DNA of 53,933 bases from Octopus sinensis (taxonomy: Eukaryota): positions 1-53,933 of the forward strand of contig NW_021835412.1 in the NCBI RefSeq assembly GCF_006345805.1, written 5' to 3'. Position numbers and translations under genes: made by a program. Each line of letters starts with the position of its first letter. Position 1 is the stretch's first letter. Shown here piece after piece: positions 9,101 through 51,078 of this stretch. The notes under the pieces were generated by a model. It ran no database searches, was not told the DNA's origin, and saw nothing but the letters and a program-made list of their open reading frames with translations.

Positions 9101-9420
9101 TACATTTGTACAAGTTGGCTCTAAGTCTCACCAAGAGACCTCAAGAGACAACAAGTTGGAAGTACATGTTGGTGTTATGCCTAGGGTGCCATATATTTGG
9201 TTTTGTACATAATGTTGTTCTACAGAATGTTTAAGAAACCATAAGAAAATTATGTTTGTTTTAAAACTTGAGATAACATAGAAAGTATTTTGCGTAGGAT
9301 ATGGGCAGTTCCCATGAATACTATTTTTTGAATATCTGCCATTTTGGGGTTTCCTGGTATCTGAGCTAGGTAGCAATCAGCCCCTTTTGCTATCATTTCC
9401 AGGGCACCTATGACAACAGG

Positions 9421-9606: not shown

Positions 9607-10160
9607 GTCTCGCATTCGCGGTGTCATTCCATCGATGTATAAAAATAGTGTTGATAACAAGTTATATATATATATTACAACGCATAGATTATTAACGATA
9701 TAGCATTTTCGAGATTCATAGATCGTTATCAACATCATTTCTCTTTATCTATTTCTTTTTCTATCACATTTGTTATTTCTTTTTTATTTATATTTTTTAT
9801 GTGTGCCTACAAGAGTATGTTTATGTATGTGAGGTGGTGATGTATGAGTATGATGGTGGTGGTGGTAGTATGGTGGGGGAGTTTGTTTCTGTTTGTCATG
9901 AAATCCACCTCAAACGCCTTCTTCATCCACCGCCCTTTCAGAAATTTGAACTTACATTTTCTATTTATTGGCATTTCGTCCGATACGTTTGTAAAATGAA
10001 TTAGTTTTGCTTTGATTTAGACAAGCTTCGTTCGTTTCCATAAACTTACGCTTTCGTCAGCCATTTTCTATGAGAAAAAAACCCCAATAAAATCTGCAAC
10101 AATAGCAGCAACAACAACTACAATAACGACGACGACAACAACAACAACAACAATAATAAT

Positions 10161-10315
10161 GGCTTCAAAATTTAGTACAGGGCTAGCAAATGCGAGAGAG
10201 GGGGGTAAATCGATTACATCGACCCCACTGTCCAGCTGGTACTTATTTTATCAATTCCGAAAGGATGAAAGGCAAAGTCAACCTTGGCGAAATTTGAACA
10301 CAGAACATCAAGCCG
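10161..10315 (-). mobile_element. SINE family A, 5'-truncated
   Basis: tcgattacatcgacccc...aaggatgaaaggcaaagtcaaccttggcgaaatttgaac. Confidence 0.8.
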
Positions 10316-10320
10316 TTGCT

Positions 10321-10321
<1 letters not shown>

Positions 10322-10365
<44 letters not shown>

Positions 10366-10429
10366 TAATAATGATGATAATAATAATAATAATAATAATA
10401 ATAAGATAATGATAATAATAATAATAATG

Positions 10430-10508
<79 letters not shown>

Positions 10509-10659
10509 ATGATATGAATAATGATAATAATATAATAATAATAATAATAATGATAATAATAATAATAATAATGATAATAATATAATAATATAATAATAAT
10601 AATAATAATAATAATGTAATAATAATAATAATAATAAAATAATGATAATGATAATAATA

Positions 10660-10694
<35 letters not shown>

Positions 10695-10735
10695 TAATGA
10701 TAATAATAATAAATAATAATGATAATGTAATAATA

Positions 10736-10766
<31 letters not shown>

Positions 10767-10873
10767 TATAATAATAATAATAATAATAATAATATAATAA
10801 TAATAAATAATAATATATAATAATGATAATGATAATAATATAATGATAATGATTAATAATAATAATAATAATG

Positions 10874-10909
<36 letters not shown>

Positions 10910-10945
10910 TAATAATGATAATAATAATAAATAATAATAATAATA

Positions 10946-10979
<34 letters not shown>

Positions 10980-11018
10980 TATAATAATAATAATAATAAT
11001 ATGATAATGATAATAATA

Positions 11019-11100
<82 letters not shown>

Positions 11101-11113
11101 TAATAATAATAAT
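10322..11113. repeat. Long degenerate (AAT)n microsatellite
   Basis: Directly visible, about 790 bp. Confidence 0.95.
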
Positions 11114-11820
11114 ATGTTACCAAAAACATATAATGAAAAGAAACATAGCAAGTAACTGCAGAATATGTGGAGATGGACAAGAAACAATAAATCATATTAT
11201 CTCTAGCTGCCCAGTCCTGGCTAAGAAGGAATATATTCACAGACACGACAGTGTTGGGACCTACATACACTGGAAGCTATGCCAACACTATGGAATAACA
11301 ACAGAAAAATGATGGTAGAGGTACACGCCTGAAAAGGTCACAGAAAACGAGAAAGCAACCATTCTTTGGGATATGCCAATTCACACATAGATAAATTAAG
11401 GCCAACAGGCCAGATATAGTTGTCAGAGATCATGAAGAAAAAAATGCTTTTTAAGTGATGTATCAATACCAGCAGATGACAACGTTTCTCTAAAAGAATT
11501 GGAGAAACTTTCAAAATACAAAGACCTGGAAATAGAGGTAACTCGAATGCGGAATCTTAAAAAAAGGGACAATTCCTATCATAGTAGGCGCATTAGGTAT
11601 GATATAAAATTTTCGGACAAATACATAACAAAAACACCAGGACTTACAAATATATATATAACATACAGAAAATTGCACTACTGGGCACTGCACACATCCT
11701 ACGCAAAACACTTTCAATACAGTAACCATAAGAGCATCACAACAAACCACAGCACATACCCAAGGCACAGAGCTGTGCTCAGTAGTGAAGTGAAAGCACG
11801 CTATAAAAATAAAACTACTG
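11114..11820 (+). mobile_element. 5'-truncated R4/Dong LINE (subfamily a) embedded in (TAA)n
   Basis: CRICGDGQETINHIISSCPVLAKKEYIHRHDSVG (CCHC + RHD), ILWDMPIHT...KANRPDIVV, DVSIPADDNVSLKELEKLSKYKDLEIEV; frameshifts and stops; (AAT)n on both sides. Confidence 0.9.
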
Positions 11821-12531: not shown

Positions 12532-12760
12532 GGAGGTGAGCTGGCAGAATCGTCAGCACGTTGGACGAAATGCTTAGCAGTATTTCACCCGTTGTTACGT
12601 TCTGAGTTCAAATTCCGCCGGGGTCGACTTTGACTTTCATCCTTTCTAGGGTCGATAAAATAAGTACCAGGGAAACACTGGGGTTGATGTAATCGACTTG
12701 CGTCCTCCCCCGAAATTTCAGGTCTTGTGCCTATAGTAGAAAGGATTATTATTATTATTT
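12532..12760 (+). mobile_element. SINE family A, full length (tail A2)
   Basis: ggaggtgagctggcagaatcgtcagcacg...ttctgagttcaaattccgcc...cccccgaaatttcaggtcttgtgcctatagtagaaagg(att)n. Confidence 0.85.
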
Positions 12761-13734: not shown

Positions 13735-14350
13735 AAGGCGACAAGCTAACAGAATAGTTAGGAAATAATATTAGTATTGTGTTAAGGCGGCGAGCCGGCA
13801 GAAACGTTAGCATGCCTAGCGGTATTTCGTCTGCCGCTACGTTCTGAGTTCAAATTCCGCCGAGGTCGACTTTGCCTTTCATCCTTTCGGGGTCGATAAA
13901 TTAAGTACCAGTTACGCACTGGGGTCGATATAATCGACTTAATCCGTTTGTCTGTCCTTGTTTGTCCTCTCTGTGTTTAGCCTCTTGTGGGTAGTAAAGA
14001 AATAGGTATTTCGTCTGTCTTTACGTTCCGAGTTCAAATTCCGCCGAGGTCGACTTTGCCTTTCATCCTTTCGGGGTCGATAAATTAAGTACCAGTTACG
14101 CACTGGGGTCGATATAATCGACTTAATCTCTTTGTCTGTCCTTGTTTGTCCCCTCTATGTTTAGCCCCCTGTGGGCAATAAAGAAATAAGAATAGTTAGC
14201 TCGCTGGACAAAATGCGTAGCGGCAATTCGACAGTTTTTACGTTCAGAGTTGAAATGTCACACAGATCCATTTTTCTCTTTTTAACCTTCGGGTCGATAA
14301 AATGAAAAGTATCAATCAAATACTGGGATCGATGCAATTGACTAACCCAC
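13735..14350 (+). mobile_element. Old SINE A interrupted by a young dimeric SINE A (13786-14188)
   Basis: Host head at 13735-13761 and host body from 14189; 11-bp TSD AGAATAGTTAG at 13751-13761 and 14189-14199; inner 184-bp tandem repeat. Confidence 0.85.
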
Positions 14351-17320: not shown

Positions 17321-17384
17321 ATAAAATTTTTTCACAATATTGTCGAATAAAGTATATGATCTGAAGAATTACTTTTATAACAAG

Positions 17385-17852
17385 CAGGCATTTGCCTTAT
17401 TCTGAACGCCTTATTTCCATGGGCATGGATACATTGAGACTCCGACGTCTGGAAGCTGACTTGGCAGACACCCATAAAATTATCAACCATCTTACAAACA
17501 ATAACTCTGAGCACCTTTTCAAACTACACCTGTCTGACACCCGTGGACATGTTTATAAAGTCAGAAAACAGCACAGCTCCCATGACTTTCGGAAACACTT
17601 TTTCACGTTAAGAGTTGCTGAAGTATAGAACAAACTGCCGGCATCAGTTGTTAGTTGTCGAAGCACTGCATCCTTCAAAATTTCCATGCTTCCTGAGATT
17701 CGCCAACACTACACCTGATTTTCTGCCCTCCATACACACGCAAGCATGTATCTGGCTCATACACTGTTCACTTCCCAGACATTTGTACATTACTGCATAT
17801 GCTTTATACGCTTTATACGTTGTGGTGCACCTGAGCACTGTATACAATAATG

Positions 17853-17855
<3 letters not shown>
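17385..17855 (+). mobile_element. CR1-clade LINE 3' fragment
   Basis: YSERLISMGMDTLRLRRLEADL...TRGHVYKVRK...RKHFFTLRVAEV, then NKLPASVVSCRSTASFK; 3' UTR ending in (ATT)n. Confidence 0.85.
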
Positions 17856-17893
<38 letters not shown>

Positions 17894-18422
17894 GAGGAGA
17901 GCAGTGCATGCCATCAATGACACTGGGGTAAAATATACGAAGCCCAATATACCCATCATGACTACCCGTCTGATAAAGGTACACCAGGCACATGCATCAC
18001 AACCATTGTGCGCGACATGGTGATCTCATATCAAGATAAACAGCACATGACCTTCAGGTGGGGCCCAGTTAGATTTTCTTCAGGTTGAGTAGCCCATCCC
18101 GCTCAAGGTCCCTGAATAAGGATTGTTTAAGGATGTTGAAAGAACCACCCATGTTTCCAGAGGTGAATTATTCAAAACCCAAAGAATCCCTCTCAACACA
18201 TGGCTATGATGCCCCCCACTACTTCTGCTCGTGACAGAGATGCACATATCGTCAGCCACTAAGGGACATGCCAACTGGTTGGTCAAACAACTGACAAGCA
18301 AATCTGTGGTACTGAGCAGAATATTTGCTGTAGCCCATTTTATACCAAGACAAAACAATGTACATGATAACACTTCCAATCAGTTAAGATCAAGGCCATG
18401 AGAGCCACTGCCTGGTACTGCA
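17894..18422 (-). mobile_element. Family D non-coding (TAA)n-embedded retroposon, near full length
   Basis: Highly similar to 45767-46230, 49899-50452 and 50609-50873; (TTA)n on both sides; no ORF with recognisable domains. Confidence 0.85.
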
Positions 18423-18447
18423 ATTATTATTATTATTATTATTATTA

Positions 18448-18486
<39 letters not shown>

Positions 18487-20275: not shown

Positions 20276-20343
20276 CACATACCCAAGGCACACAGAGCTG
20301 CGCTCGGTAGTGAAGTGAAAGCACGCTATAAAAAATAAAACTA

Positions 20344-20347
<4 letters not shown>
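20276..20347 (+). mobile_element. 72-bp 3' tip of R4/Dong subfamily a in (TAA)n
   Basis: cacatacccaaggcacacagagctgcgctcggtagtgaagtgaaagcacgctataaaaaataaaactactga, nearly identical to 11753-11820. Confidence 0.85.
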
Positions 20348-26014: not shown

Positions 26015-26788
26015 TTTCTTTATTACCCACAAGAGGCTAAACATAGAGGGGACAAACAAGGACAAACAAGGGGATTAAGTCGATTACATCGACCCCAGTG
26101 CGAAACTGGTACTTAATTTATCGACCCCGAAAGGATGAAAGGCAAAGTCGACCTCGGCGGAATTTGAACTCAGAACATAACGGCAGACGAAATACCTATT
26201 TCTTTACTACCCACAAGGGGCTAAACATAGAGGGTACAAACAAGGACAGACAAGGGGATTAAGTCGATTACATCGACTCCAGTGCGAAACTGGTACTTAA
26301 TTTATCGACCCCGAAAGGATGAAAGGCAAAGTCAACCTCGGCGGAATTTGAACTCAGAACGTAGCGGCAGACGAAATACCTATTTCTTTATTACCCACAA
26401 GGGGCTAAACATAGAGGGGACAAACAAGGACAAACAAGGGGATTAAGTCGATTACATCGACCCCAGTGCGAAACTGGTACTCAATTTATCGACCCCGAAA
26501 AGATGAAAGGCAAAGTTGACCTCGGCGGAATTTGAACTCAGAACGTAACGGCAGACGAAATACCTATTTCTTTACTACCCACAAGGGGCTAAACATAGAG
26601 GGGAAAAACAAGGACAGACAAGGGGATTAAGCCGATTACATCCACCTCAACGGGTAACTGGTACTTAATTTATCGACCCCGAAAGGATGAAAGGCAAAGT
26701 CGACCTCGGCGGAATTTGAACTCAGAACGTAACGACACGAAATACCGCTAAGCATTTCGCCCGGCGCGCTAACGTGTCTGCCAGCTCG
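26015..26788 (-). mobile_element. Tetrameric SINE family A concatemer (4 x 184 bp)
   Basis: Units start at 26015, 26199, 26383 and 26567; only the 5'-most unit carries the tRNA head (to 26788). Confidence 0.9.
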
Positions 26789-36882: not shown

Positions 36883-37981
36883 TCGAATGACTGGATGCTA
36901 AAGCTCGTGGAAAATCACGAGAGACGAAAGAAGCTTCATTCTATCATCAAGGAAAGCAAAATATTTGCTATTGATCTCGTGCAGGATACCCAAACTGAAC
37001 AACCCGAGGGAAGTACGGCAACTATTGCTGCAAAGAAGGTGAAAATGATGGCAATGAAAAAAGCGCACGAGCAATTGGCTGATAGGTGGGAGGAGAAACC
37101 TCTGCACGGCAAATATGTGACCCGCAGCAAACAAGCTGATGTTGACCAGAAGCAAACCCATCAGGGCTAAAAGCAGAGAGCGAAGGTTTCATCCTGGCTG
37201 CTCAAGACCAAAGCCTATCAACCCGGAACTACCAGGCCAATGTGATGAAAAATGGAGCAGACCCAAAATGCCGATTCTGCAACGACATGATTGAAACAGT
37301 GGACCACCTAATCTCTGGATGTAAAGTCTTAGCACCAGTGGAGTATAAATTAAGACATGACAGAGTTGGCCAATATCTCCACTGGCTAATAAGTCGGCAT
37401 TACAATATCAAAACTGCCGACAAGTGGTATAATCACCACCCTGAGGCTGTAACTGAAGGAGAAAATGTAACCATTCTGTGGACTTTCCAGTACATACAGA
37501 CCGAACCATCAAGGCCAATAAACCAGATATTGTTGTGAAAGACCAAACAATAAAGTTTGCTTATTGATCGACATGAGCATCCCCTGTGATCATAATATCT
37601 CAGCGAAAGAGTTTGACAAGCTCAGAAAATATAAAGACCTACTCATTGAAATTGAGAAAATGTGGCATCTCAAGGCGGTTACAATACCAGTGATCGTAGG
37701 AGCACTAGGAATGATCAAGAAGGGAACCAAAAATTATATGAGAATGATCCCTGGCTTACCATCCCTGCAAGAAGTGCAAAAGATTGTCTTAACTGGTACA
37801 CACACGTATTGAGAAGAGCATTGTCGATGTGAGAACTGTCTGCCTCATGCATTTTAATTTAACTTAAAAAAAAAAAAAAAAAAAAATTAACGAACTACTG
37901 AGTTTGTTTAATGGCCTACCAATATACACTATGAGTTTCTTTGCAAGAAATGGAAGAAATTTTGAAAGAAGAAAAAAAAAG
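36883..37981 (+). mobile_element. 5'-truncated R4/Dong LINE (subfamily c), first unit of a tandem array
   Basis: WEEKPLHGKY, LKAESEGFILAAQDQ, CRFCNDMIETVDHLISGCKVLAPVEYKLRHDRVG, KANKPDIVV, IDMSIPCD...FDKLRKYKDL...IPVIVGALG; (AAT)n on both sides. Confidence 0.92.
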
Positions 37982-38035
37982 TAATAATAATAATAATAAT
38001 AATAATAATATAATAATAATAATAATATAATAATA

Positions 38036-38525
38036 AACCGGATATTATTATAAAAGATCAGACAAAAAGGATGTGTTTATTAATTGACATGAGTATTCCC
38101 TGTGATCACAATATAGTGGCGAAAGAATTTGACAAGATTAGTAAATATAAAGACGAGCTAATAGAAATTGAAAAAACGTGGCATCTCAAGGCGACTACAG
38201 TACCAGTGATTGTTAGGATCTCTGGGAATGATAAAAAAAAAGGTGCTGAAACCTATTTGAAAACGATTCCAGGCTTACCATCCCTACAGGAAGTGCAAAA
38301 ACTCGTATTAACTGGAACGGCTCATGTACTGAGAAGAGCACTATCGCTGTGAAAATAACATCCATCCATGAATTTATTTATTTATTTATCAATTTTTAAA
38401 TACATATTTATCTGTGAATTTGCGTGTGTAATCTGGGAATGCATACAATGAACTTCTCTGCCCTAGGTGTATGGAAAACACTCGGCGAAAAACGGAAGAA
38501 AATTTTAAGAAAGAAGGAAAAAACA
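38036..38525 (+). mobile_element. R4/Dong 3' fragment (subfamily d), second unit of the array
   Basis: PDIIIKD...CLLIDMSIPCDHNIVAKEFDKISKYKDE...LQEVQKLVLTGTAHVLRRALSL*; distinct 3' UTR. Confidence 0.9.
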
Positions 38526-38533
38526 TAATAATA

Positions 38534-38600
<67 letters not shown>

Positions 38601-38843
38601 CCCTGCAAGAAGTGCAAAATATTGTCTTAACTGGTACATCACACGTATGAGAAGAGCATTGTCGATGTGAGAATATTACTACCCATGTATTTCAATTTAA
38701 CTTAAAAAAAAATGAACGAACTAGTGAGTTAGTTTAATGGCTACCAATGTATACTATGAGTTCTTTGCCCTAGGAGTCGGGAAGACATCGGCAAGAAATG
38801 GAAGCAAATTTGAAAGAAGAAGAAAAAAAAAGAAACAACAACA
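38601..38843 (+). mobile_element. R4/Dong 3' tip (subfamily c), third unit of the array
   Basis: Starts ccctgcaagaagtgcaaaa (LQEVQ); 3' UTR homologous to 37830-37981. Confidence 0.88.
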
Positions 38844-38881
38844 ATATAATAATAGTAGTAGTAATAATAATAATAATAATA

Positions 38882-42154: not shown

Positions 42155-44673
42155 CACTGAGCAACAAAAAAAATTTTCGTCTGGTGCTTGGAATATTTCA
42201 ACGAGTTCTTAAGTGATTTTAACTGCTAAATTTTAAAAAAAACACGGATCTGTGGTCCATCAAAAATCCCTGCTTTAAGCTTTCCAATCGTGAAGCCTGG
42301 AAATACACTGCAGATATACTTGAAGCGCTCCCCATTTTTGTCAAGAGCTTTTTCTCTATCAGGTCTAGTTTTCTGACTAAACCTGATAGAGTAAGTATTT
42401 TACTCATACAAAAGGCATATAGTATGAATCAATAAAGAGAGCGTAACACAAAACAAAACGGAGTACAAATAAAAATTCAAAACTGAATATGCACATTGGT
42501 TAAGATTTTTGGCAGAAAATTCAAGGAATAAATTTGTGCTTCTTTGTGCACCGAGAATGTTGGGCAACAGGAGTATCTCCTGTCAAACATCAACAATAGT
42601 CTGCCATCATCACAGCATCCTGATGTCCTTTGTATCGTCTTTCCATCTCCTTGATATCCTGATGGAATCGTACGCCTTGTTTATCGCTAGCATCTCCGGG
42701 ATTTTCAGGAAAACGATCAAGATGATTAAAAAGATAATGCATTTTGATGCTCATATTCGCGCCAATGTCACGAAAAGTTGATATCAAGTTGGTAATAAGG
42801 TCTTTATAGAGGGCGGCGAGCTGGCAGAACCGTTAGCACGCCGGGCGAAATGCTTAGTGCTATTTCATCCGTCTTTACGTTCTGAGTTCAAATTCCGCCG
42901 AGATCGACTTTGCCTTTCATCCTTTCGGGATCGATAAATTAAGTACCAGTTGCGCACTGGGGTCGATCTAATCGACTGGCACCCTCCTCCAAAAATTTCG
43001 GGCTTGTGCCTAGAGTAGAAAAAAAATGGTCTTTATAGTTTTCACTTTTGTGTTTCCCCAAAAATTTTGCACTACTTCTGAAAAGGTTAGCCAAGCTGAT
43101 GCTTCATTTTCGCTCATTACTTTCACGAAATTTGTGTCCTTCAAGAGCTTACTTATCTGTGGTCCATCAAAAATCCCTGCTTTAAGCGTTTCAATCGTGA
43201 AGCCAGGAAATACACTGCAGATATACTTGAAGCACTCCTCATTTTCTCAAGAGCTTTGACGAATTGCTTGATCAATCCGAGCTTGATGTGCAAAAGAGGG
43301 AAAATGATCTTATCTCGCTCAACTAAACGTTCTTCCAATATATTGGCAGCTCTACATGGGTCCATATTTGTTCGAGGCGGCCAGTCTTTCTTAACATAGT
43401 GGTTTCCTTGGTCTCTACTGTCCCACATACATAGAAAACATGGGTATTTGTTATAACCGGATTGCTATCCCATGAGAAAATTCACCATCTTTAAGTCAAC
43501 GCAGATGATCCATTTATGGTCAATATACAGTATATTCTATATAACCAACCTAATTTCTTCATATTTTGTCTTCAGAGTTGTTGAATGGCCGAGTGGGACA
43601 GAGCCATACACATTTCCGTTGTGCAACAATACACATTTTAAGCTACGCTTAGAGCTGTCTATGGAACGACGCTATTCCTCTGATTTGTATTCCTCAATGC
43701 CAAGCTTATTAAGAAGTCCACTGCAATAGACCAGTTCTTCCTGTTTTGTGAAAAAAAAGAAAAGAAAGGAACTCTTCTTGCCAACTCCGATAAAATGTTG
43801 TATGGAGACCGTTCTCTAGAAGATTTTCTCATTCACTCGAGAAGCCAACAGTTCTGCAGAATTTTTGGGAGGTTCAAGTCACGAACTAGATCACTAGTTC
43901 GAATAGCTGAGGTAAAGTCTCAACTGAAATGTCTTGATCTCTAGTGTCATCTTCAGGTGATGAATCTTCTTTGGTTGAGGGTAAAGTTATCCGAGGCAAG
44001 ACATTGAAGACAGGAACAGGAAGCTCTTCACTGTGTGGAACCGGTCTAATAGCAGGGGCAAGATAATAGCAGAGGCAAAATAGACAAATCTTTGTCAATT
44101 TTTCCGGTTAATACCCTGGAAATTTAGGTTAAAAAATAGAAGTCATCCACGTGATTATAGGGCTCCTGTCATACCATTGGTATAGCAAACCTTATACTTT
44201 TCTTTGTCCTTTTAGTCCATTACCGCAAATGTTCAGTACATTATTTGCAGACACTATTCGGTGCCAATATTGGTGTCCCAGCTTGATTCCAAAATATGCC
44301 ATATACGCTCTTTCAACAAAATCAGTAATGCTTTTTCGATTTTACTGGCAATGTGTATTCTCCAGAAACATAAGAAAACACGTTTGGAGAATTAACGCAA
44401 CACTTTCTTGAGGAGGACATCTTGCTCATTTTATATTGCTTAGTTCACCACAACATCTAAAAAGTATGGAAAAAGGAAAAAAAATCAGATTTATAATAAG
44501 GTAACGAACATTGAGTACTGGACGTACACACATACATAGTGGTTATAGGGATTTCGATAACTTAAAAACTAGATCTGATAAGTCAAAAAGAATGTTATAT
44601 TTGGATTCGGTAGACCGATTTTGTATAGGAATGATGTCTATTTACTAAAGACCAAAAGACTTGTAGACCAGTG
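42155..44673 (-). mobile_element. Full-length decayed DNA transposon, Chapaev3-like (CMC group)
   Basis: Ends CACTG.../...CAGTG with TTA duplicated at 42152-54 and 44674-76; fragments AYMAYFGIKLG, FAIPMV*QEPYNHVDDFYF, AIRPVPHSEELPVP, LHIKLGLIKQFVKAL, GIFDGPQI, MSIKMHYLFNHLDRFPEN...FHQDIKEMERRY...MMADYC; family name from recalled motifs. Confidence 0.75.
42812..43026 (+). mobile_element. SINE family A (tail A2) inserted into the Chapaev-like transposase
   Basis: 11-bp TSD GGTCTTTATAG at 42799-42809 and 43028-43038. Confidence 0.9.
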
Positions 44674-45663: not shown

Positions 45664-45733
<70 letters not shown>

Positions 45734-45766
45734 GTCATTATTATTACTATTATTATTATTATTATA

Positions 45767-46227
45767 GAGTGAGAGAGCAGTGCATGCCATCAAAGTGACA
45801 CTGGGGTAAAATATACGAAGCCCAGTATACCCATCATGGTTACCCGTCTGATAAGTGTACACCAGGCACATGCATCACAACCATATGGGCGCAACATGGT
45901 GATTTCATATCATGATAAACAGCACATGACCTTGCAGGTAGGGTCCAGTTAAGATTTTTTTCTGGTCGAGTAGCCCATCCCGCTCAAAAGGTCCCTGAAT
46001 AAGGGTTGTTTAAGGATATTGAACGAAACACTCATGTTTCCAGATGTGAATTATTCAAACCCAAAAGAATCCCTCTCAACACATGGCTATGATGCTCCCC
46101 CACTACTTCTGCTCGTGATCAGAGATGCACATTTCGTCAGCCACTAAGGGACATTCTCAACTGGTTAAGGTTAAACAACTGACAAGCAAATCTGTGGTAT
46201 TGAGCAGAATATTTGCTGTAGCCCATC

Positions 46228-46230
<3 letters not shown>
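45767..46230 (-). mobile_element. Family D copy, 5'-truncated
   Basis: Same fixed end gagtgagagagcagtgcatgcc at 45767; truncated at gcccatcttt into (TTA)n. Confidence 0.88.
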
Positions 46231-46275
<45 letters not shown>

Positions 46276-46277
<2 letters not shown>

Positions 46278-48420
46278 ATAACTTTAGTGGTTCTGCGAGT
46301 GCTGCCTTCACGGGTAATCCAGGGATGAGATTGAGAACATCCTCACTAACTACAGACTGCTGATTCAAAAGTTCATCAAAGTGTTCTTGCCAACTTCGCA
46401 GAATTCCTTGTGAATCACGAAGAAGTTCTTTACCATCCCTGCTTCGAAGTGGTGTCATCAGAGAAGACGTCGGTCCATAAACTTCTCGCAAGAGACCATA
46501 CAACAGCTTTGTGTTATTGGAATCCGACGCCACCTGTATCTCATCAGCCCTCTTACTCCACCACGTATCCCTCATCTGAGAGAGCCTTCGCCTCACACGT
46601 GATTTTACATCCTTGAGTTCCCTATGAAACACTTCCCTTTCCTGTGGCTTTGATGACAAATAGCGTGACAAAGTACGTCTTTTATCAGCTAATAAATCAT
46701 CTATATATTCATCACTTTCTTTAAAGCAATCTTGATGCTTTCTTGGTATCAATCCCAGAACTTTCTTGCCTATATCATAAACTGACTTTTTAAGGGTCGG
46801 TCAATCCTCTCCAATATCTGCAGCATTCATTCTTCTCGTAAAGTTCTCTTCACGCTATTACACCTAAGACGATCAACATTCAGTCTTTTAGGCAGGGTAA
46901 TCCCTGCATCCTGGATTTTATGTTTTGTGACTAATTTCACTTTTGCACGTACTAGGCGGTGGTCAGTCCAACACTCAGCTCCACGAAGAACACGAACACA
47001 CTGCACATCCTGTCTGTCACGCACCTTAACAAGGATGTAATCCAGAATATGCCATTCTTTAGATGCAGGGTGCATCCATGTGGTCTTAAACTTATTCTTT
47101 TGTTGAAACATAGTTTTGCTAACACACAGACGCAGCTCCTCACACATCTGCAGCAAAAGCATGCCATTACTATTACACTTTCCCATCCCATGCTTTCCAA
47201 TTACAGTCCATGTGTTAAAATCCCTACCCACTCTAGCATTAAAGTCACCCAGTACGATGACTTTGTCAGCCCGTCTGCCCGAGGGATAGTTCTTATAATG
47301 CTCTTCAAAGCATGGTAGAAAGAAATTTTTTCGTCATCAGTATAGCACATAGTTGGAGTATACACACTCACCAAGGTCACATAATTTCCTTTAACCAAAA
47401 GAATTCTCATGGACATAAGACGCTCGTTAATTCCGCCTGGGAATTCTTCCAACTTGTCCACAAGAGTTGTCTTAACAGCAAATGCTACTCCAGCCTCTCC
47501 TCTAAACTCTTCATTCCTCCCTTTCCAAAAGAACGTATATTTTTCACAAGATTCTGTAAGATGACCATCTCCAGGTAATCTCGTCTCAGATAAAGCAACA
47601 ATGTCAAGATCATAGCGTTGAAGCTCCTTCACAACAAGCGCAGTCCTGCACTCAGGACATTCATAGGACTTGCGGTCAAGTAGTGTCCTTACATTACAAC
47701 AGCCAATATTCAATATTTTATTTTGTTCTATCACAGTAGCATGATGACGGCCGGGTTCAGACTGTGATGCTCTGGAGCCCCTGCCGGGCCAGACTCTTTC
47801 ATCTGATGTGGTTCCAGAGTCCTTACTGCGATTTATTTTTATACTGTTTTGGTACATCATTGATTATTTGCATTTTTTAAGGCTACAGCCAGCCATTCAG
47901 TTGAGACTCACAGCACTATCAATAATCATGAATTAGTTAATCAATTTAATAAATCAATCAATCAATCAATATTGTTATTATGCAATGCCTGTGCAAGAAG
48001 ATTTTTTTTAAAGTGAGGAAAGGCTGTGCACTGAGTCAGTCCCACTCACTAAGCAACAGCAGCTATAATCCGAAAAGAAGAACAAGTTAACATCATCGGT
48101 AACCACTGAGCCGCAGGTTTTTATGTCGGAGTTATCCCAGTTACCTGAGTTACCTTCTCCTACAAGGATGCCTAACAAAGGCTCGGAGTCCTTCACTCCC
48201 AATGGTTTAACCACGCGATCGGGTATTCAGTCTGTTGACTCTCAAGAGTTCCTCCGCCCTTTGACGGGTTTTGTTTTTCATCCCGCAGGGTGTCCAATAA
48301 ACACCCTCCTCACCAAACAAGCTTGGTGGGTTTGCCGGTATAGTCGCCGACGGCCCGACCATGCAACAGGCTGTACCGGGTTACATGTTACCAGTAGCAC
48401 TTGAAAGTGACCTGACCATA
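46276..48420 (-). mobile_element. RTE (BovB-like) LINE 5' half: 5' UTR + AP endonuclease, RT half missing
   Basis: LNIGCCNVRTLLD...RTALVVKELQRYDLDIVALSETRL...GVAFAVK...VSVYTPT...LGDFNARVG...TWMHP...HILDYILV...ECWTDHRLV; frameshifts; ends abruptly at (TAA)n. Confidence 0.9.
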
Positions 48421-49589: not shown

Positions 49590-49624
49590 TTCATAGTAAT
49601 TATTATTATTATTATTATATTATC

Positions 49625-49658
<34 letters not shown>

Positions 49659-49754
49659 CCATCATCATTATTATTATTATTTTATTATATTATTATTATT
49701 ATTATTATTATTATTTTATCATTATCATATCATTATCACCATCATCATCTCATC

Positions 49755-49797
<43 letters not shown>

Positions 49798-49854
49798 TGT
49801 TATTATTATTATTATTTTATCATTATCATCACATCAATCATATCATCATTATCA

Positions 49855-49894
<40 letters not shown>

Positions 49895-49898
49895 CATC
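49590..49898. repeat. Degenerate (TTA)n/(TCA)n tract
   Basis: Directly visible. Confidence 0.9.
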
Positions 49899-50452
49899 GA
49901 GTGAGAGAGAGAGCAGTGCATGCCATCAAAGTGACACTGGGGTAAAATATACGAAGCCCAGTATACCCATCATGACTACCCGTCTGATAAAGGTACACCA
50001 GGTCACATGCATCACAACCATATCTGCGCGACATGGTGATCTCATATCAAGATAAACAGCACATGACCTTGCATGTGTGGGCCAGTTAGAATTTTCTTCT
50101 GATCGAGTAGCCCATCCCGCTCAAAAGGTCCCTGAATAAGGGTTGTTTAAGGATGTTGAACGAAACACTTTTTTCTAGAGGTGAATTATTCAAACCCCAA
50201 AGAATCCCTCTCAACACATGGCTATGATGCTCCCCCACTACTTCTGCTCGTGATCAGAGATGCATATATCGTCAGCCACTAAGGGACATGCTCAACTCAT
50301 TATGGTCAAACAACTGACAAGCAAGTCTGTGATATTGAGCAGAATATTTGCTGTAGCCCATCTTTTTACTAGACAAAACAATGTACATGATAACGCTTCC
50401 AATCAGTAAGATCAGAAGCCATGAGAGCCACTGTCTGGTACTGATCAGGGCA
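49899..50452 (-). mobile_element. Family D copy, longest (about 554 bp)
   Basis: gagtgagag...gtactgatcagggca, with (TTA)n on both sides. Confidence 0.88.
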
Positions 50453-50608
50453 TTATTATTATTATTATATTATTATTATTATTATTTTAATATTATTATT
50501 AATATGATTATATTATTACTACTACTTACTACCACTACTACTACTACTACTACTATACTATACTACTACTACTATACTACTACTAATACTACTACTACTA
50601 TTATTATT

Positions 50609-50873
50609 GAGTGAGAGAGCAGCAGTTCATGCCATCAAAGTGACACTGGGGTAAAACATACGAAGCCCAATATACCATCATGACTACCGTCTGATAAAGG
50701 TACACCAGGCACATGCATCAACAACCATATGTGCGCGACATGGTGATCTCATATCAAGATAAACAGCACATGACCTTGCAGGTGGGGCCCAGTTAGAATT
50801 TTCTTCAGGTTGAGTAGCCCATCCTGCTCAAACGGTCCCTGAATAAGGGTTGTTTAAGGATGTTGAAAGAACC
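50609..50873 (-). mobile_element. Family D copy, heavily 5'-truncated
   Basis: Same fixed end; truncated at gaaagaacc into (TTA)n. Confidence 0.88.
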
Positions 50874-50898
50874 ATTATTATATTATTATTATTATTAT

Positions 50899-51078
50899 CA
50901 TTTTATTGTCTTTGCATAGCTTCTAACGCTGGAGATGTACTATGGTGCCACCTGTTCACTACCAGTGAACTAAACTAACACCTCTTATTTTTCCAGCACC
51001 ATCTGGAGTATTCGAGCGGTTCCTACTAGTGCTGTTTTCTGCAAGTGCTCCACCCTTAATGCAGCCCTTATTTGTTCT
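50899..51078 (-). mobile_element. R4/Dong 3' tip (subfamily e)
   Basis: Minus strand EQIRAALRVEHLQKTALVGTARILQMVLEK* plus 3' UTR followed by (TAA)n. Confidence 0.75.

What the first reader, a model, noticed from the sequence alone, without database searches (positions are those of the whole stretch)
17894..18422. Family D: ORF-less ~555-bp retroposon that inserts into (TAA)n like R4/Dong, a candidate non-autonomous partner
Seen: four copies (17894, 45767, 49899, 50609) share one fixed end (gagtgagagagcagtgcatgcc) and have variable opposite ends. Two end within about 7 nt of each other and two are truncated, the signature of a minus-strand element with 5' truncation. All are embedded in (TTA)n, with the element 3' end followed by (AAT)n, the same polarity as the Dong fragments. 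There is no tRNA A/B-box head and no recognisable ORF. The 3' end folds CAGTG-TCA-CTT-TGA...CACTG. Established: R2/R4-clade LINEs can mobilise short non-autonomous derivatives (SIDEs). Inference: a microsatellite-targeted, non-Pol III SINE/SIDE riding Dong machinery, possibly undescribed as such.
Basis: partly seen in the sequence, partly recalled or inferred. Interest (0 to 1): 0.78.

Follow-up and report, generated by a model that had tools for sequence, protein, structure and literature searches.

The report
Short ORF-less retroposon in octopus (TAA)n arrays
Family D is a real, roughly 554-bp non-coding "hitch-hiker" retroposon of octopus genomes that is copied into (TAA)n microsatellites in the same orientation as Dong LINEs, but its link to Dong is circumstantial and it is an ordinary kind of repeat.

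Summary
The window has four Family D copies, 90-91% identical, with a constant end and a variable opposite end. All sit in (ATT)n on the + strand.

I fetched 110 kb of Octopus bimaculoides and O. sinensis DNA and found five more loci. These fix a discrete 5' end (GCCCTGATGCAGTACC, 3 of 9 copies) and a 554-nt consensus. All nine 3' ends (...GGCATGCACTGCTCTCTCACTC) are followed by (AAT)n, and the 5' truncations are scattered.

D has no ORF, no tRNA or other Rfam match, no terminal inverted repeats, and three internal T4 runs. It is therefore a non-coding, non-Pol III, non-autonomous non-LTR retroposon made by target-primed reverse transcription. It is not the truncated 3' UTR of a longer LINE as far as nine copies show.

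D shares strand polarity and head-to-tail nesting in (TAA)n with three Dong/R4 families in the window. Four of nine copies lie tail-to-tail with (ATT)n tails of antisense SINE or CR1-like LINE copies.

D shares no sequence with any Dong 3' UTR seen. The proposed 3' hairpin has no statistical or covariation support, and no 5' ribozyme was found. "SIDE derived from Dong" is therefore unsupported, and "mobilised by Dong" is an inference (about 0.55). Genome-wide copy number and Dfam/Repbase status could not be checked.

The parts
17894..18422 (-). D copy c1, nearly full length (529 nt; lacks the first 8 nt of the consensus 5' end)
17855..17893 (-). (AAT)13 directly 3' of c1. The same run is the (ATT)13 3' tail of the antisense CR1-like LINE end at 17365-17854 (+).
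18423..18486 (-). (AAT)21 directly 5' of c1 (remaining target array)
45767..46228 (-). D copy c2, 5'-truncated (462 nt). It has a 3' (AAT)n/(GAT)n run at 45665-45766 and a 5' (TAA)16 at 46229-46276.
49899..50451 (-). D copy c3, full length (553 nt), with 5' end GCCCTGATCAGTACC. Its 3' side is the degenerate (AAT)~100 array at 49599-49898.
50452..50608 (-). (AAT)23 plus (GTA)28 lying between c4 (upstream on the minus strand) and c3. This gives a head-to-tail D-D arrangement.
50609..50873 (-). D copy c4, 5'-truncated (265 nt), with (AAT)n 5' flank at 50874-50907
36883..38845 (+). Context: three 5'-truncated Dong-a (R4-clade, CCHC + RLE C-terminus) copies head to tail (36883-37981, 38037-38524, 38601-38845). 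Each is followed by (TAA)n, and the 3' end is ...GAAAGAAGAAAAAAAAAG.
11115..11820 (+). Context: Dong-b 3' fragment between (TAA)~266 and (AAT)11, with 3' end ...AAAATAAAACTACTG. A second 71-bp copy lies at 20276-20346.
17365..17854 (+). Context: 3' end of a CR1-like LINE (C-terminal ...LRLRRLEADL... motif). Its sense strand ends in (ATT)13, and c1 sits in that tail in antisense.

Best explanation
Family D is a non-coding, non-autonomous non-LTR retroposon of octopus genomes. The consensus is 554 nt with 46% GC. An RNA running from GCCCUGAUGCAGUACC... to ...GGCAUGCACUG(CU)nCACUC plus an (AAU)n tail is copied into DNA by target-primed reverse transcription, and this often stops early, leaving 5'-truncated copies (shown by anatomy).

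Integration takes place in (TAA)n/(TTA)n arrays in one fixed polarity. Many of these arrays are the (ATT)n 3' tails of oppositely oriented tRNA-like SINEs and CR1-like LINEs, or the (TAA)n tails of earlier D copies, so the elements pile up in nests (shown).

The enzyme is supplied in trans. The most likely source is a Dong/R4-clade LINE (RT, CCHC finger, restriction-like endonuclease), the only autonomous elements seen here with the same tail and polarity. The (UAA)n tail would anneal to the nicked (TTA)n strand, rather than recognition going through a shared 3' UTR (inferred).

D is probably not transcribed by Pol III. Read-through or Pol II transcription is assumed.
For: Retroposon anatomy:
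- Four window copies plus five loci in O. bimaculoides and O. sinensis.
- All 9 of 9 copies with a 3' end finish at the same sequence followed by (AAT)n.
- Three copies (c3, Ob_A, and c1 minus 8 nt) share one 5' terminus. Six are cut at scattered points (consensus about 93, 290, 343, 395, about 510).
- Flanks are unrelated between copies.
- There is no ORF, no Rfam or tRNA match and no terminal inverted repeats. T4 runs lie at consensus positions 76, 332 and 510.

Target and polarity:
- The 5' flank is (TAA)n in 6 of 9 copies.
- c4-c3 form a head-to-tail pair, like the three Dong-a copies.
- The tails of Ob_B, Ob_E and Ob_S/Os_S run into the (ATT)n tail of an antisense SINE. The tail of c1 runs into that of an antisense LINE 3' end.
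- Every Dong 3' end seen (Dong-a x3, Dong-b x2) is followed by (TAA)n on its sense strand, and Dong-c has (TAA)56 at its 5' flank. SINE and CR1-like ends carry (ATT)n.

Background:
- Dong elements are known (TAA)n-specific LINEs, including in a snail (PMC3812793).
- Dong-R4 is among the most active LINE groups in O. vulgaris (PMC13282606).

Age: orthologous copies A, C and S are present in both O. bimaculoides and O. sinensis.
Against: - There is no sequence similarity between D and the 3' UTRs of Dong-a, Dong-b or Dong-c, or any other Dong fragment available. Trans-mobilisation by those families would therefore need tail-based rather than UTR-based recognition, which is not established for R2/R4-type enzymes.
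- Three copies have no (TAA)n at the 5' junction, so target specificity is not proven copy by copy.
- No clean empty site was obtained.
- Octopus RTE LINEs also end in a microsatellite of unstated motif (PMC9115989) and were not available for comparison.
- Only nine copies in about 153 kb were examined, and part of that sample was reached through D itself.
Confidence: 0.55

Rival explanations
1. D is mobilised by a different LINE clade whose RNA also ends in (UAA)n, for example an octopus RTE or another APE-type LINE that shares D's 3' end. The (AAT)n is then mainly the element's own tail, and the (TAA)n neighbourhoods arise because such tails seed microsatellites.
For: Ob_B, Ob_E and Ob_S have (AAT)n only on the 3' side. 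D shares nothing with the Dong 3' UTRs seen. The octopus RTE-2_OV ORF runs straight into a microsatellite 3' UTR (PMC9115989). RTE-borne microsatellite families are known in Lepidoptera (PMC2887409).
Against: In 153 kb, the only autonomous 3' ends abutting (TAA)n in this polarity are Dong. Six of nine copies have (TAA)n on both sides, and D-D and Dong-Dong head-to-tail stacks look alike. No LINE with D's 3' end was seen.
Confidence: 0.25
2. D is a strict SIDE: an internally deleted Dong that keeps the parent's 5' end (with a processing ribozyme) and 3' UTR.
For: It has the same target and polarity as Dong and a precise 5' end in three copies. SIDEs of R2 have exactly this logic (PMC3414825).
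Against: The 3' end is unlike Dong-a, Dong-b and Dong-c. Rfam finds no HDV-like or other ribozyme. A relaxed double-pseudoknot descriptor fits only an edited consensus, not real copies, and fits 14% of shuffles. No Dong 5' end was available to compare.
Confidence: 0.1
3. D is just the long 3' UTR of an autonomous LINE, and the copies are ordinary 5'-truncated LINE insertions.
For: It has a fixed 3' end with variable 5' ends. With only the four window copies, two ends within 8 nt could be chance (my rough estimate, p about 0.08).
Against: A third, independent copy in O. bimaculoides starts at the same nucleotide as c3, with unrelated upstream DNA in all three. None of nine copies extends beyond it.
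Confidence: 0.06
4. D is a DNA element (a MITE of a TTA/TAA-targeting superfamily, or a Helitron/Helentron derivative), or a segmental duplication.
For: It has TA-rich target sites, fixed orientation relative to the repeat, and a small stem near one end.
Against: There are no terminal inverted repeats. Truncation is always at the same end and flush with the repeat. A simple-repeat tail lies at one end only in three copies. Flanks are unrelated. The stem is not significant.
Confidence: 0.03

Closest known systems
R2 SIDEs (short internally deleted elements) of Drosophila (PMC3414825)
   Same: They are short, ORF-less and non-autonomous. They use the target site and orientation of a site-specific RLE-type LINE, have a precise 5' end and show 5'-truncated copies.
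   Different: SIDEs keep the parent's 5' ribozyme and 3' UTR. D shares no sequence with the Dong 3' UTRs seen, and no ribozyme is detectable. The target is a microsatellite, not rDNA.
Dong / R4-clade LINEs (B. mori Dong, DongAg, DongBg; PMC3812793) and octopus Dong-R4 (PMC13282606)
   Same: (TAA)n lies at both junctions in one strand polarity, and copies stack head to tail within arrays and are 5'-truncated.
   Different: Dong encodes RT, a CCHC finger and RLE. D encodes nothing and has an unrelated 3' end.
LINE-dependent SINEs with simple-repeat tails (for example the UnaSINE1/UnaL2 type, from my own knowledge, and RTE-associated microsatellite families, PMC2887409)
   Same: They are non-autonomous, with a simple-repeat tail that matches the tail of the presumed partner.
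   Different: D has no Pol III-derived head and has internal T4 runs. No stretch shared with a LINE 3' end has been found so far.
Alu/L1 (relaxed, tail-based trans-mobilisation; my own knowledge)
   Same: The only feature shared with the presumed driver is the tail. New copies preferentially land in the tails of older copies.
   Different: The tail is (TAA)n, not poly(A). The driver would be an RLE-type site-specific LINE, for which tail-only recognition is unproven.

Membership tests
Non-LTR retroposon made by target-primed reverse transcription | Constant 3' end with variable 5' truncation | tested here: met
   All 9 of 9 copies end at ...GCACTG(CT)nCACTC. The 5' ends lie at consensus positions 1, 1, 9, about 93, about 290, 343, 395 and about 510.
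Non-LTR retroposon made by target-primed reverse transcription | Simple-repeat or A-rich 3' tail | tested here: met
   (AAT)n follows every 3' end, at 3 to about 100 units.
Non-LTR retroposon made by target-primed reverse transcription | Independent insertions (unrelated flanks) and target-site duplications | tested here: inconclusive
   Flanks are unrelated. Target-site duplications cannot be read inside microsatellites, and no clean empty site was obtained.
Canonical SINE | Pol III-derived head (tRNA, 7SL, 5S or snRNA) with A/B boxes | tested here: not met
   ARAGORN found 0 genes, and Rfam found 0 matches at E up to 10 on both strands.
Canonical SINE | Transcribable by Pol III (no internal T4+ terminators) | tested here: not met
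   TTTT occurs at consensus positions 76, 332 and 510, and in c1, c2 and c3.
Canonical SINE | 3' region shared with the partner LINE | tested here: not met
   There is no similarity to Dong-a, Dong-b or Dong-c, or to the CR1-like 3' end, at blastn word size 7 and E up to 1. Other octopus LINEs were not available.
SIDE (internally deleted derivative of an R2-superclade LINE) | 3' UTR identical or homologous to the parent LINE | tested here: not met
   (three Dong families in the window, plus L001 and the L005 fragments)
SIDE (internally deleted derivative of an R2-superclade LINE) | 5' end shared with the parent, with a self-cleaving ribozyme | tested here: inconclusive
   No Rfam ribozyme was found. 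The descriptor search was not above chance. No full-length Dong 5' end was available for comparison.
SIDE (internally deleted derivative of an R2-superclade LINE) | Same target site and orientation as the parent | tested here: met
   (TAA)n lies on the sense strand for all D and all Dong copies.
Dong/R4-clade LINE | Encodes RT, CCHC zinc finger and C-terminal restriction-like endonuclease | tested here: not met
   D has no ORF. The window's Dong fragments do show CRFC...H...C and KPD...D...K motifs, and their homologues carry YMDD RT.
MITE / TIR DNA transposon | Terminal inverted repeats | tested here: not met
   No inverted repeat pairs the two termini.

The most novel reading that the evidence does not exclude
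D is the first non-autonomous parasite of a Dong/R4-clade LINE, and it is recognised only through its (UAA)n tail. Octopus genomes would then hold two retroposon guilds with complementary tails. Dong and D end in (TAA)n. The tRNA-like SINE and CR1-like LINEs end in (TTA)n. Each guild's tails would serve as landing pads for the other, in antisense, and for itself, in sense, producing self-propagating microsatellite/TE nests.
Probability: 0.3. Interest if true: 0.6.

Novelty: new member of a known kind. Interest (0 to 1): 0.38.

Why it matters
If D is driven by Dong, site-specific RLE-type LINEs other than R2 would also support short non-coding parasites, and a microsatellite tail alone might be enough for trans-mobilisation. 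This bears on how R2-like enzymes choose their templates.

For octopus genomics it gives a name, a 554-nt consensus and an orientation to a repeat that occurs about once per 15-40 kb in the small sample seen. It helps explain the dense (TAA)n/TE nests, and the repeat has already contaminated at least one gene model. Otherwise it is one more LINE-dependent repeat family.

Tried and rejected
Searches for more copies or prior descriptions:
- I searched the 5.8-billion-protein collection with a six-frame pseudo-protein of the D consensus, as a handle to other copies. The only hit was an O. bimaculoides gene model whose first 37 aa come from D antisense. That hit opened the route to O. bimaculoides and O. 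sinensis genomic loci.
- Exact-pattern scans of JGI metagenomes, prokaryotic genomes and IMG/VR gave one chance 20-mer and otherwise nothing.
- The Dong C-terminus search found only one octopus-grade contig, from a sewage metagenome. No full-length octopus Dong was found, so no Dong 5' end or further 3' UTRs could be compared.
- The empty-site test for copy Ob_B against O. sinensis failed. The interval is rearranged, with a different SINE subfamily and about 600 bp of extra DNA.
- Full-text and supplement searches for D sequence strings gave no hits.

Structural tests:
- HDV-like ribozyme at the 5' end: Rfam found nothing. My relaxed descriptor matched only an edited consensus, not the real copies, and matched 14% of shuffles. 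Rejected as evidence.
Rejected.
- Terminal inverted repeats: none.
- A PDB sequence search with the Dong C-terminus was uninformative.

Idea left as unexplained: that the CR1-like LINE 5' fragment next to c2 marks the partner through template switching. A (TAA)16 separates the two, and the LINE's sense-strand tail type is (ATT)n.

Full report
**What the window is.** The window is eukaryotic, about 38% GC and packed with microsatellites and tRNA-like SINE units. The D consensus matches genomic copies in Octopus bimaculoides (GCA_001194135.2, chromosome CM046623.1) and O. sinensis (GCA_006345805.1) at 86-95% identity. A Dong ORF in the window is 96-98% identical to a contig of octopus-like DNA in an Italian sewage metagenome. 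The window is therefore from an octopus; I did not determine the species.

**Checking the observation.** Self-comparison finds exactly four D copies: c1 17894-18422, c2 45767-46228, c3 49899-50451 and c4 50609-50873.
- They are 90-91% identical pairwise and 3-7% from the consensus.
- They share the + strand left end, GAGTGAGAG...AGCAGTGCATGCC (0 matches expected by chance).
- They differ at the right end. c1 stops 8 nt short of c3, while c2 and c4 are cut at consensus positions of about 93 and about 290.
- All are bounded on both sides by (ATT)n-type repeats.
- No reading frame is open in any copy or in the consensus.
- ARAGORN and Rfam, even at E up to 10, find nothing in D.

The description is correct at the stated coordinates and is far beyond chance.

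**Getting more copies.** No tool holds an octopus genome directly.
- I searched the protein collection with a six-frame pseudo-translation of D.
- The single hit was UniProt A0A0L8FVA6 of O. bimaculoides. Its first 37 residues are translated from the antisense strand of a D copy.
- Cluster relatives of that protein could be looked up on their contigs. This gave 70 kb of O. bimaculoides (L003, L005) and 29 kb of the orthologous O. sinensis contig (L004).

These loci carry five further D loci:
- Ob_A is full length.
- Ob_B is cut at consensus position 343.
- Ob_E is cut at consensus position 395.
- Ob_S holds only the last 45 nt.
- Ob_C is an internal fragment.

A, C and S are present at orthologous positions in O. 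sinensis, so the family was already active before those two species split.

**Anatomy from nine copies.**
- Every copy that has a 3' end finishes at ...CCCCAGTGTCACTTTGATGGCATGCACTG(CT)nCACTC, followed at once by (AAT)n (3 to about 100 units).
- c3 and Ob_A begin at the same nucleotide, GCCCTGAT(G)CAGTACCAGACAGTGGC, and c1 begins 8 nt inside it. The DNA upstream of these three is unrelated.
- The other six copies are cut at scattered internal points.
- This is the signature of reverse transcription primed at the 3' end, acting on a discrete template of about 554 nt. It is not the signature of a long LINE whose 3' UTR we happen to see.
- With the four window copies alone, the coincidence of two 5' ends was only suggestive (my rough estimate, p about 0.08). 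The third, independent copy makes it solid, although nine copies is still a small sample.
- D has no terminal inverted repeats, and the flanks of different copies are unrelated. A DNA transposon or a duplication is therefore unlikely.
- The sense strand carries TTTT at consensus positions 76, 332 and 510, conserved in the copies, and there is no Pol III head. D is not a canonical SINE.

**Is (TAA)n a target or a tail?** It appears to be both.
- Six of nine copies have (TAA)n on the 5' side as well.
- c4 and c3 are stacked head to tail within one array, exactly like the three Dong-a copies at 36883-38845.
- In Ob_B, Ob_E and Ob_S the 5' flank is not (TAA)n. There the (AAT)n behind D runs straight into the reverse complement of the 3' end of a tRNA-like SINE.
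- That SINE's own sense strand ends ...CAGGCCTTGTGCCTATAGTAGAAAGG(ATT)n. It carries the same tail where no D is present, for example at window 12707-12759.
- c1 likewise sits in the (ATT)13 tail of an antisense CR1-like LINE 3' end at 17365-17854.

A simple polarity rule holds for every element in the 153 kb. D (9 of 9) and every Dong 3' end seen (5 of 5, with Dong-c also preceded by (TAA)56) have (TAA)n on their sense strand. The SINE and the CR1-like LINE have (TTA)n on theirs.

Which element arrived first in the tail-to-tail pairs cannot be decided. In Ob_E a degenerate (AAT) remnant beyond the SINE head suggests the SINE entered an existing array. The one candidate empty site, Ob_B against O. 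sinensis, is rearranged.

**Who drives it?**
- The window holds three Dong families: Dong-a at 36883-38845, Dong-b at 11115-11820 and 20276-20346, and Dong-c at 9277-9420 on the minus strand.
- Their translated ends show the CRFC...H...C finger and the KPD...D...K restriction-like nuclease motif. Their homologues carry a YMDD reverse transcriptase upstream. This is the R2-superclade architecture.
- Published work states that Dong elements target TAA microsatellites, including in a snail (PMC3812793). Dong-R4 is among the most active LINE groups in O. vulgaris (PMC13282606).
- Dong is the only autonomous element type seen here with D's tail and polarity, which is the positive case for Dong.
- Against it, D shows no similarity to any Dong 3' UTR or other Dong sequence available (blastn word size 7, E up to 1).
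- The defining features of R2 SIDEs are a shared 3' UTR and a shared 5' ribozyme (PMC3414825). The first is not met. The second is undetectable: Rfam gives nothing, and my relaxed double-pseudoknot descriptor fits 14% of shuffles and no real copy.
Its 3' arm changes without compensation in four copies.
- If Dong is the driver, recognition must rest on the (UAA)n tail pairing with the nicked (TTA)n strand. That is an inference.
- A rival driver is a LINE not seen here that ends in (TAA)n. Octopus RTE elements have a microsatellite 3' UTR of unstated motif (PMC9115989).

**Verdict.**
- The reading as a short, ORF-less, non-Pol III, (TAA)n-associated retroposon is supported and sharpened: a 554-nt consensus, a true 5' end, presence in at least two other octopus assemblies, and an age older than their split.
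- "SIDE of Dong" is not supported.
- "Mobilised by Dong" is plausible (about 0.55) but untested.
- Abundance in the sample is about one copy per 15-40 kb. The estimate is biased and based on very few copies. Extrapolated to an assumed genome of roughly 2.5 Gb, it would suggest tens of thousands of copies.
- I could not check Dfam or Repbase. Text searches for the sequence found nothing.
- I rate it as a new member of a known kind (LINE-dependent non-autonomous retroposons) and of moderate interest.
- The more interesting but unproven reading is that two complementary-tailed retroposon guilds build landing pads for each other.

Noticed in passing
window 46277-47860 (-): The 5' part of a CR1-like LINE (start codon, APE domain with a Pfam Exo_endo_phos hit, and the linker before RT) stops abruptly at (TAA)16, which is followed by the 5'-truncated D copy c2 in the same orientation. 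A 3'-truncated LINE is unusual, and the cause (deletion at integration, or something else) is unknown.
   Followed up: partly
window 36883-38845 (+): Three 5'-truncated Dong-a copies lie head to tail, each separated by (TAA)19-33 and preceded by an antisense SINE head. This is a nest built by repeated insertion into the previous copy's tail.
   Followed up: partly
window 12707-12759, 10160-10321 (-); L003 18828-18904; L005 5188-5390: The abundant tRNA-like octopus SINE subfamily ending ...CTTGTGCCTATAGTAGAAAGG carries an (ATT)n tail on its sense strand. It also stacks head to tail (SINE-(ATT)n-SINE). Its tail is the complement of the Dong/D tail.
   Followed up: partly
window 13821-14188 and 26015-26746: There are tandem arrays (2 and 4 units, 184-bp period, 93-94% matches) of a SINE-derived unit, which is a satellite-like amplification of the SINE.
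   Followed up: no
window 10322-11114: A very long, degenerate (TAA)~266 array lies between a 5'-truncated SINE (minus strand) and Dong-b.
   Followed up: no
L003 9747-9948 (O. bimaculoides CM046623.1): UniProt A0A0L8FVA6 begins with 37 residues translated from the antisense strand of D copy Ob_B. The newer RefSeq model XP_014786617.2 starts 50 bp downstream and does not use it. This is probably a repeat-derived annotation artefact or an alternative first exon.
   Followed up: partly
L001 (ENA ERZ22666216, 1983 bp): A contig of an Italian sewage metagenome encodes a Dong ORF 96-98% identical to the window's Dong-a. This is octopus (food) DNA in a metagenome assembly.
   Followed up: no
L003 9612-9717 vs L004 6390-6600: At the same (ATC)n site, O. 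bimaculoides and O. sinensis carry SINEs with different 3' halves (two subfamilies). This means either independent insertions at one microsatellite or a conversion or rearrangement.
   Followed up: no
window 42593-43464 (-): Frame-broken ORFs with the ...KYPCFLCMWDSR... motif typical of a transposase-derived protein family. Not identified.
   Followed up: no
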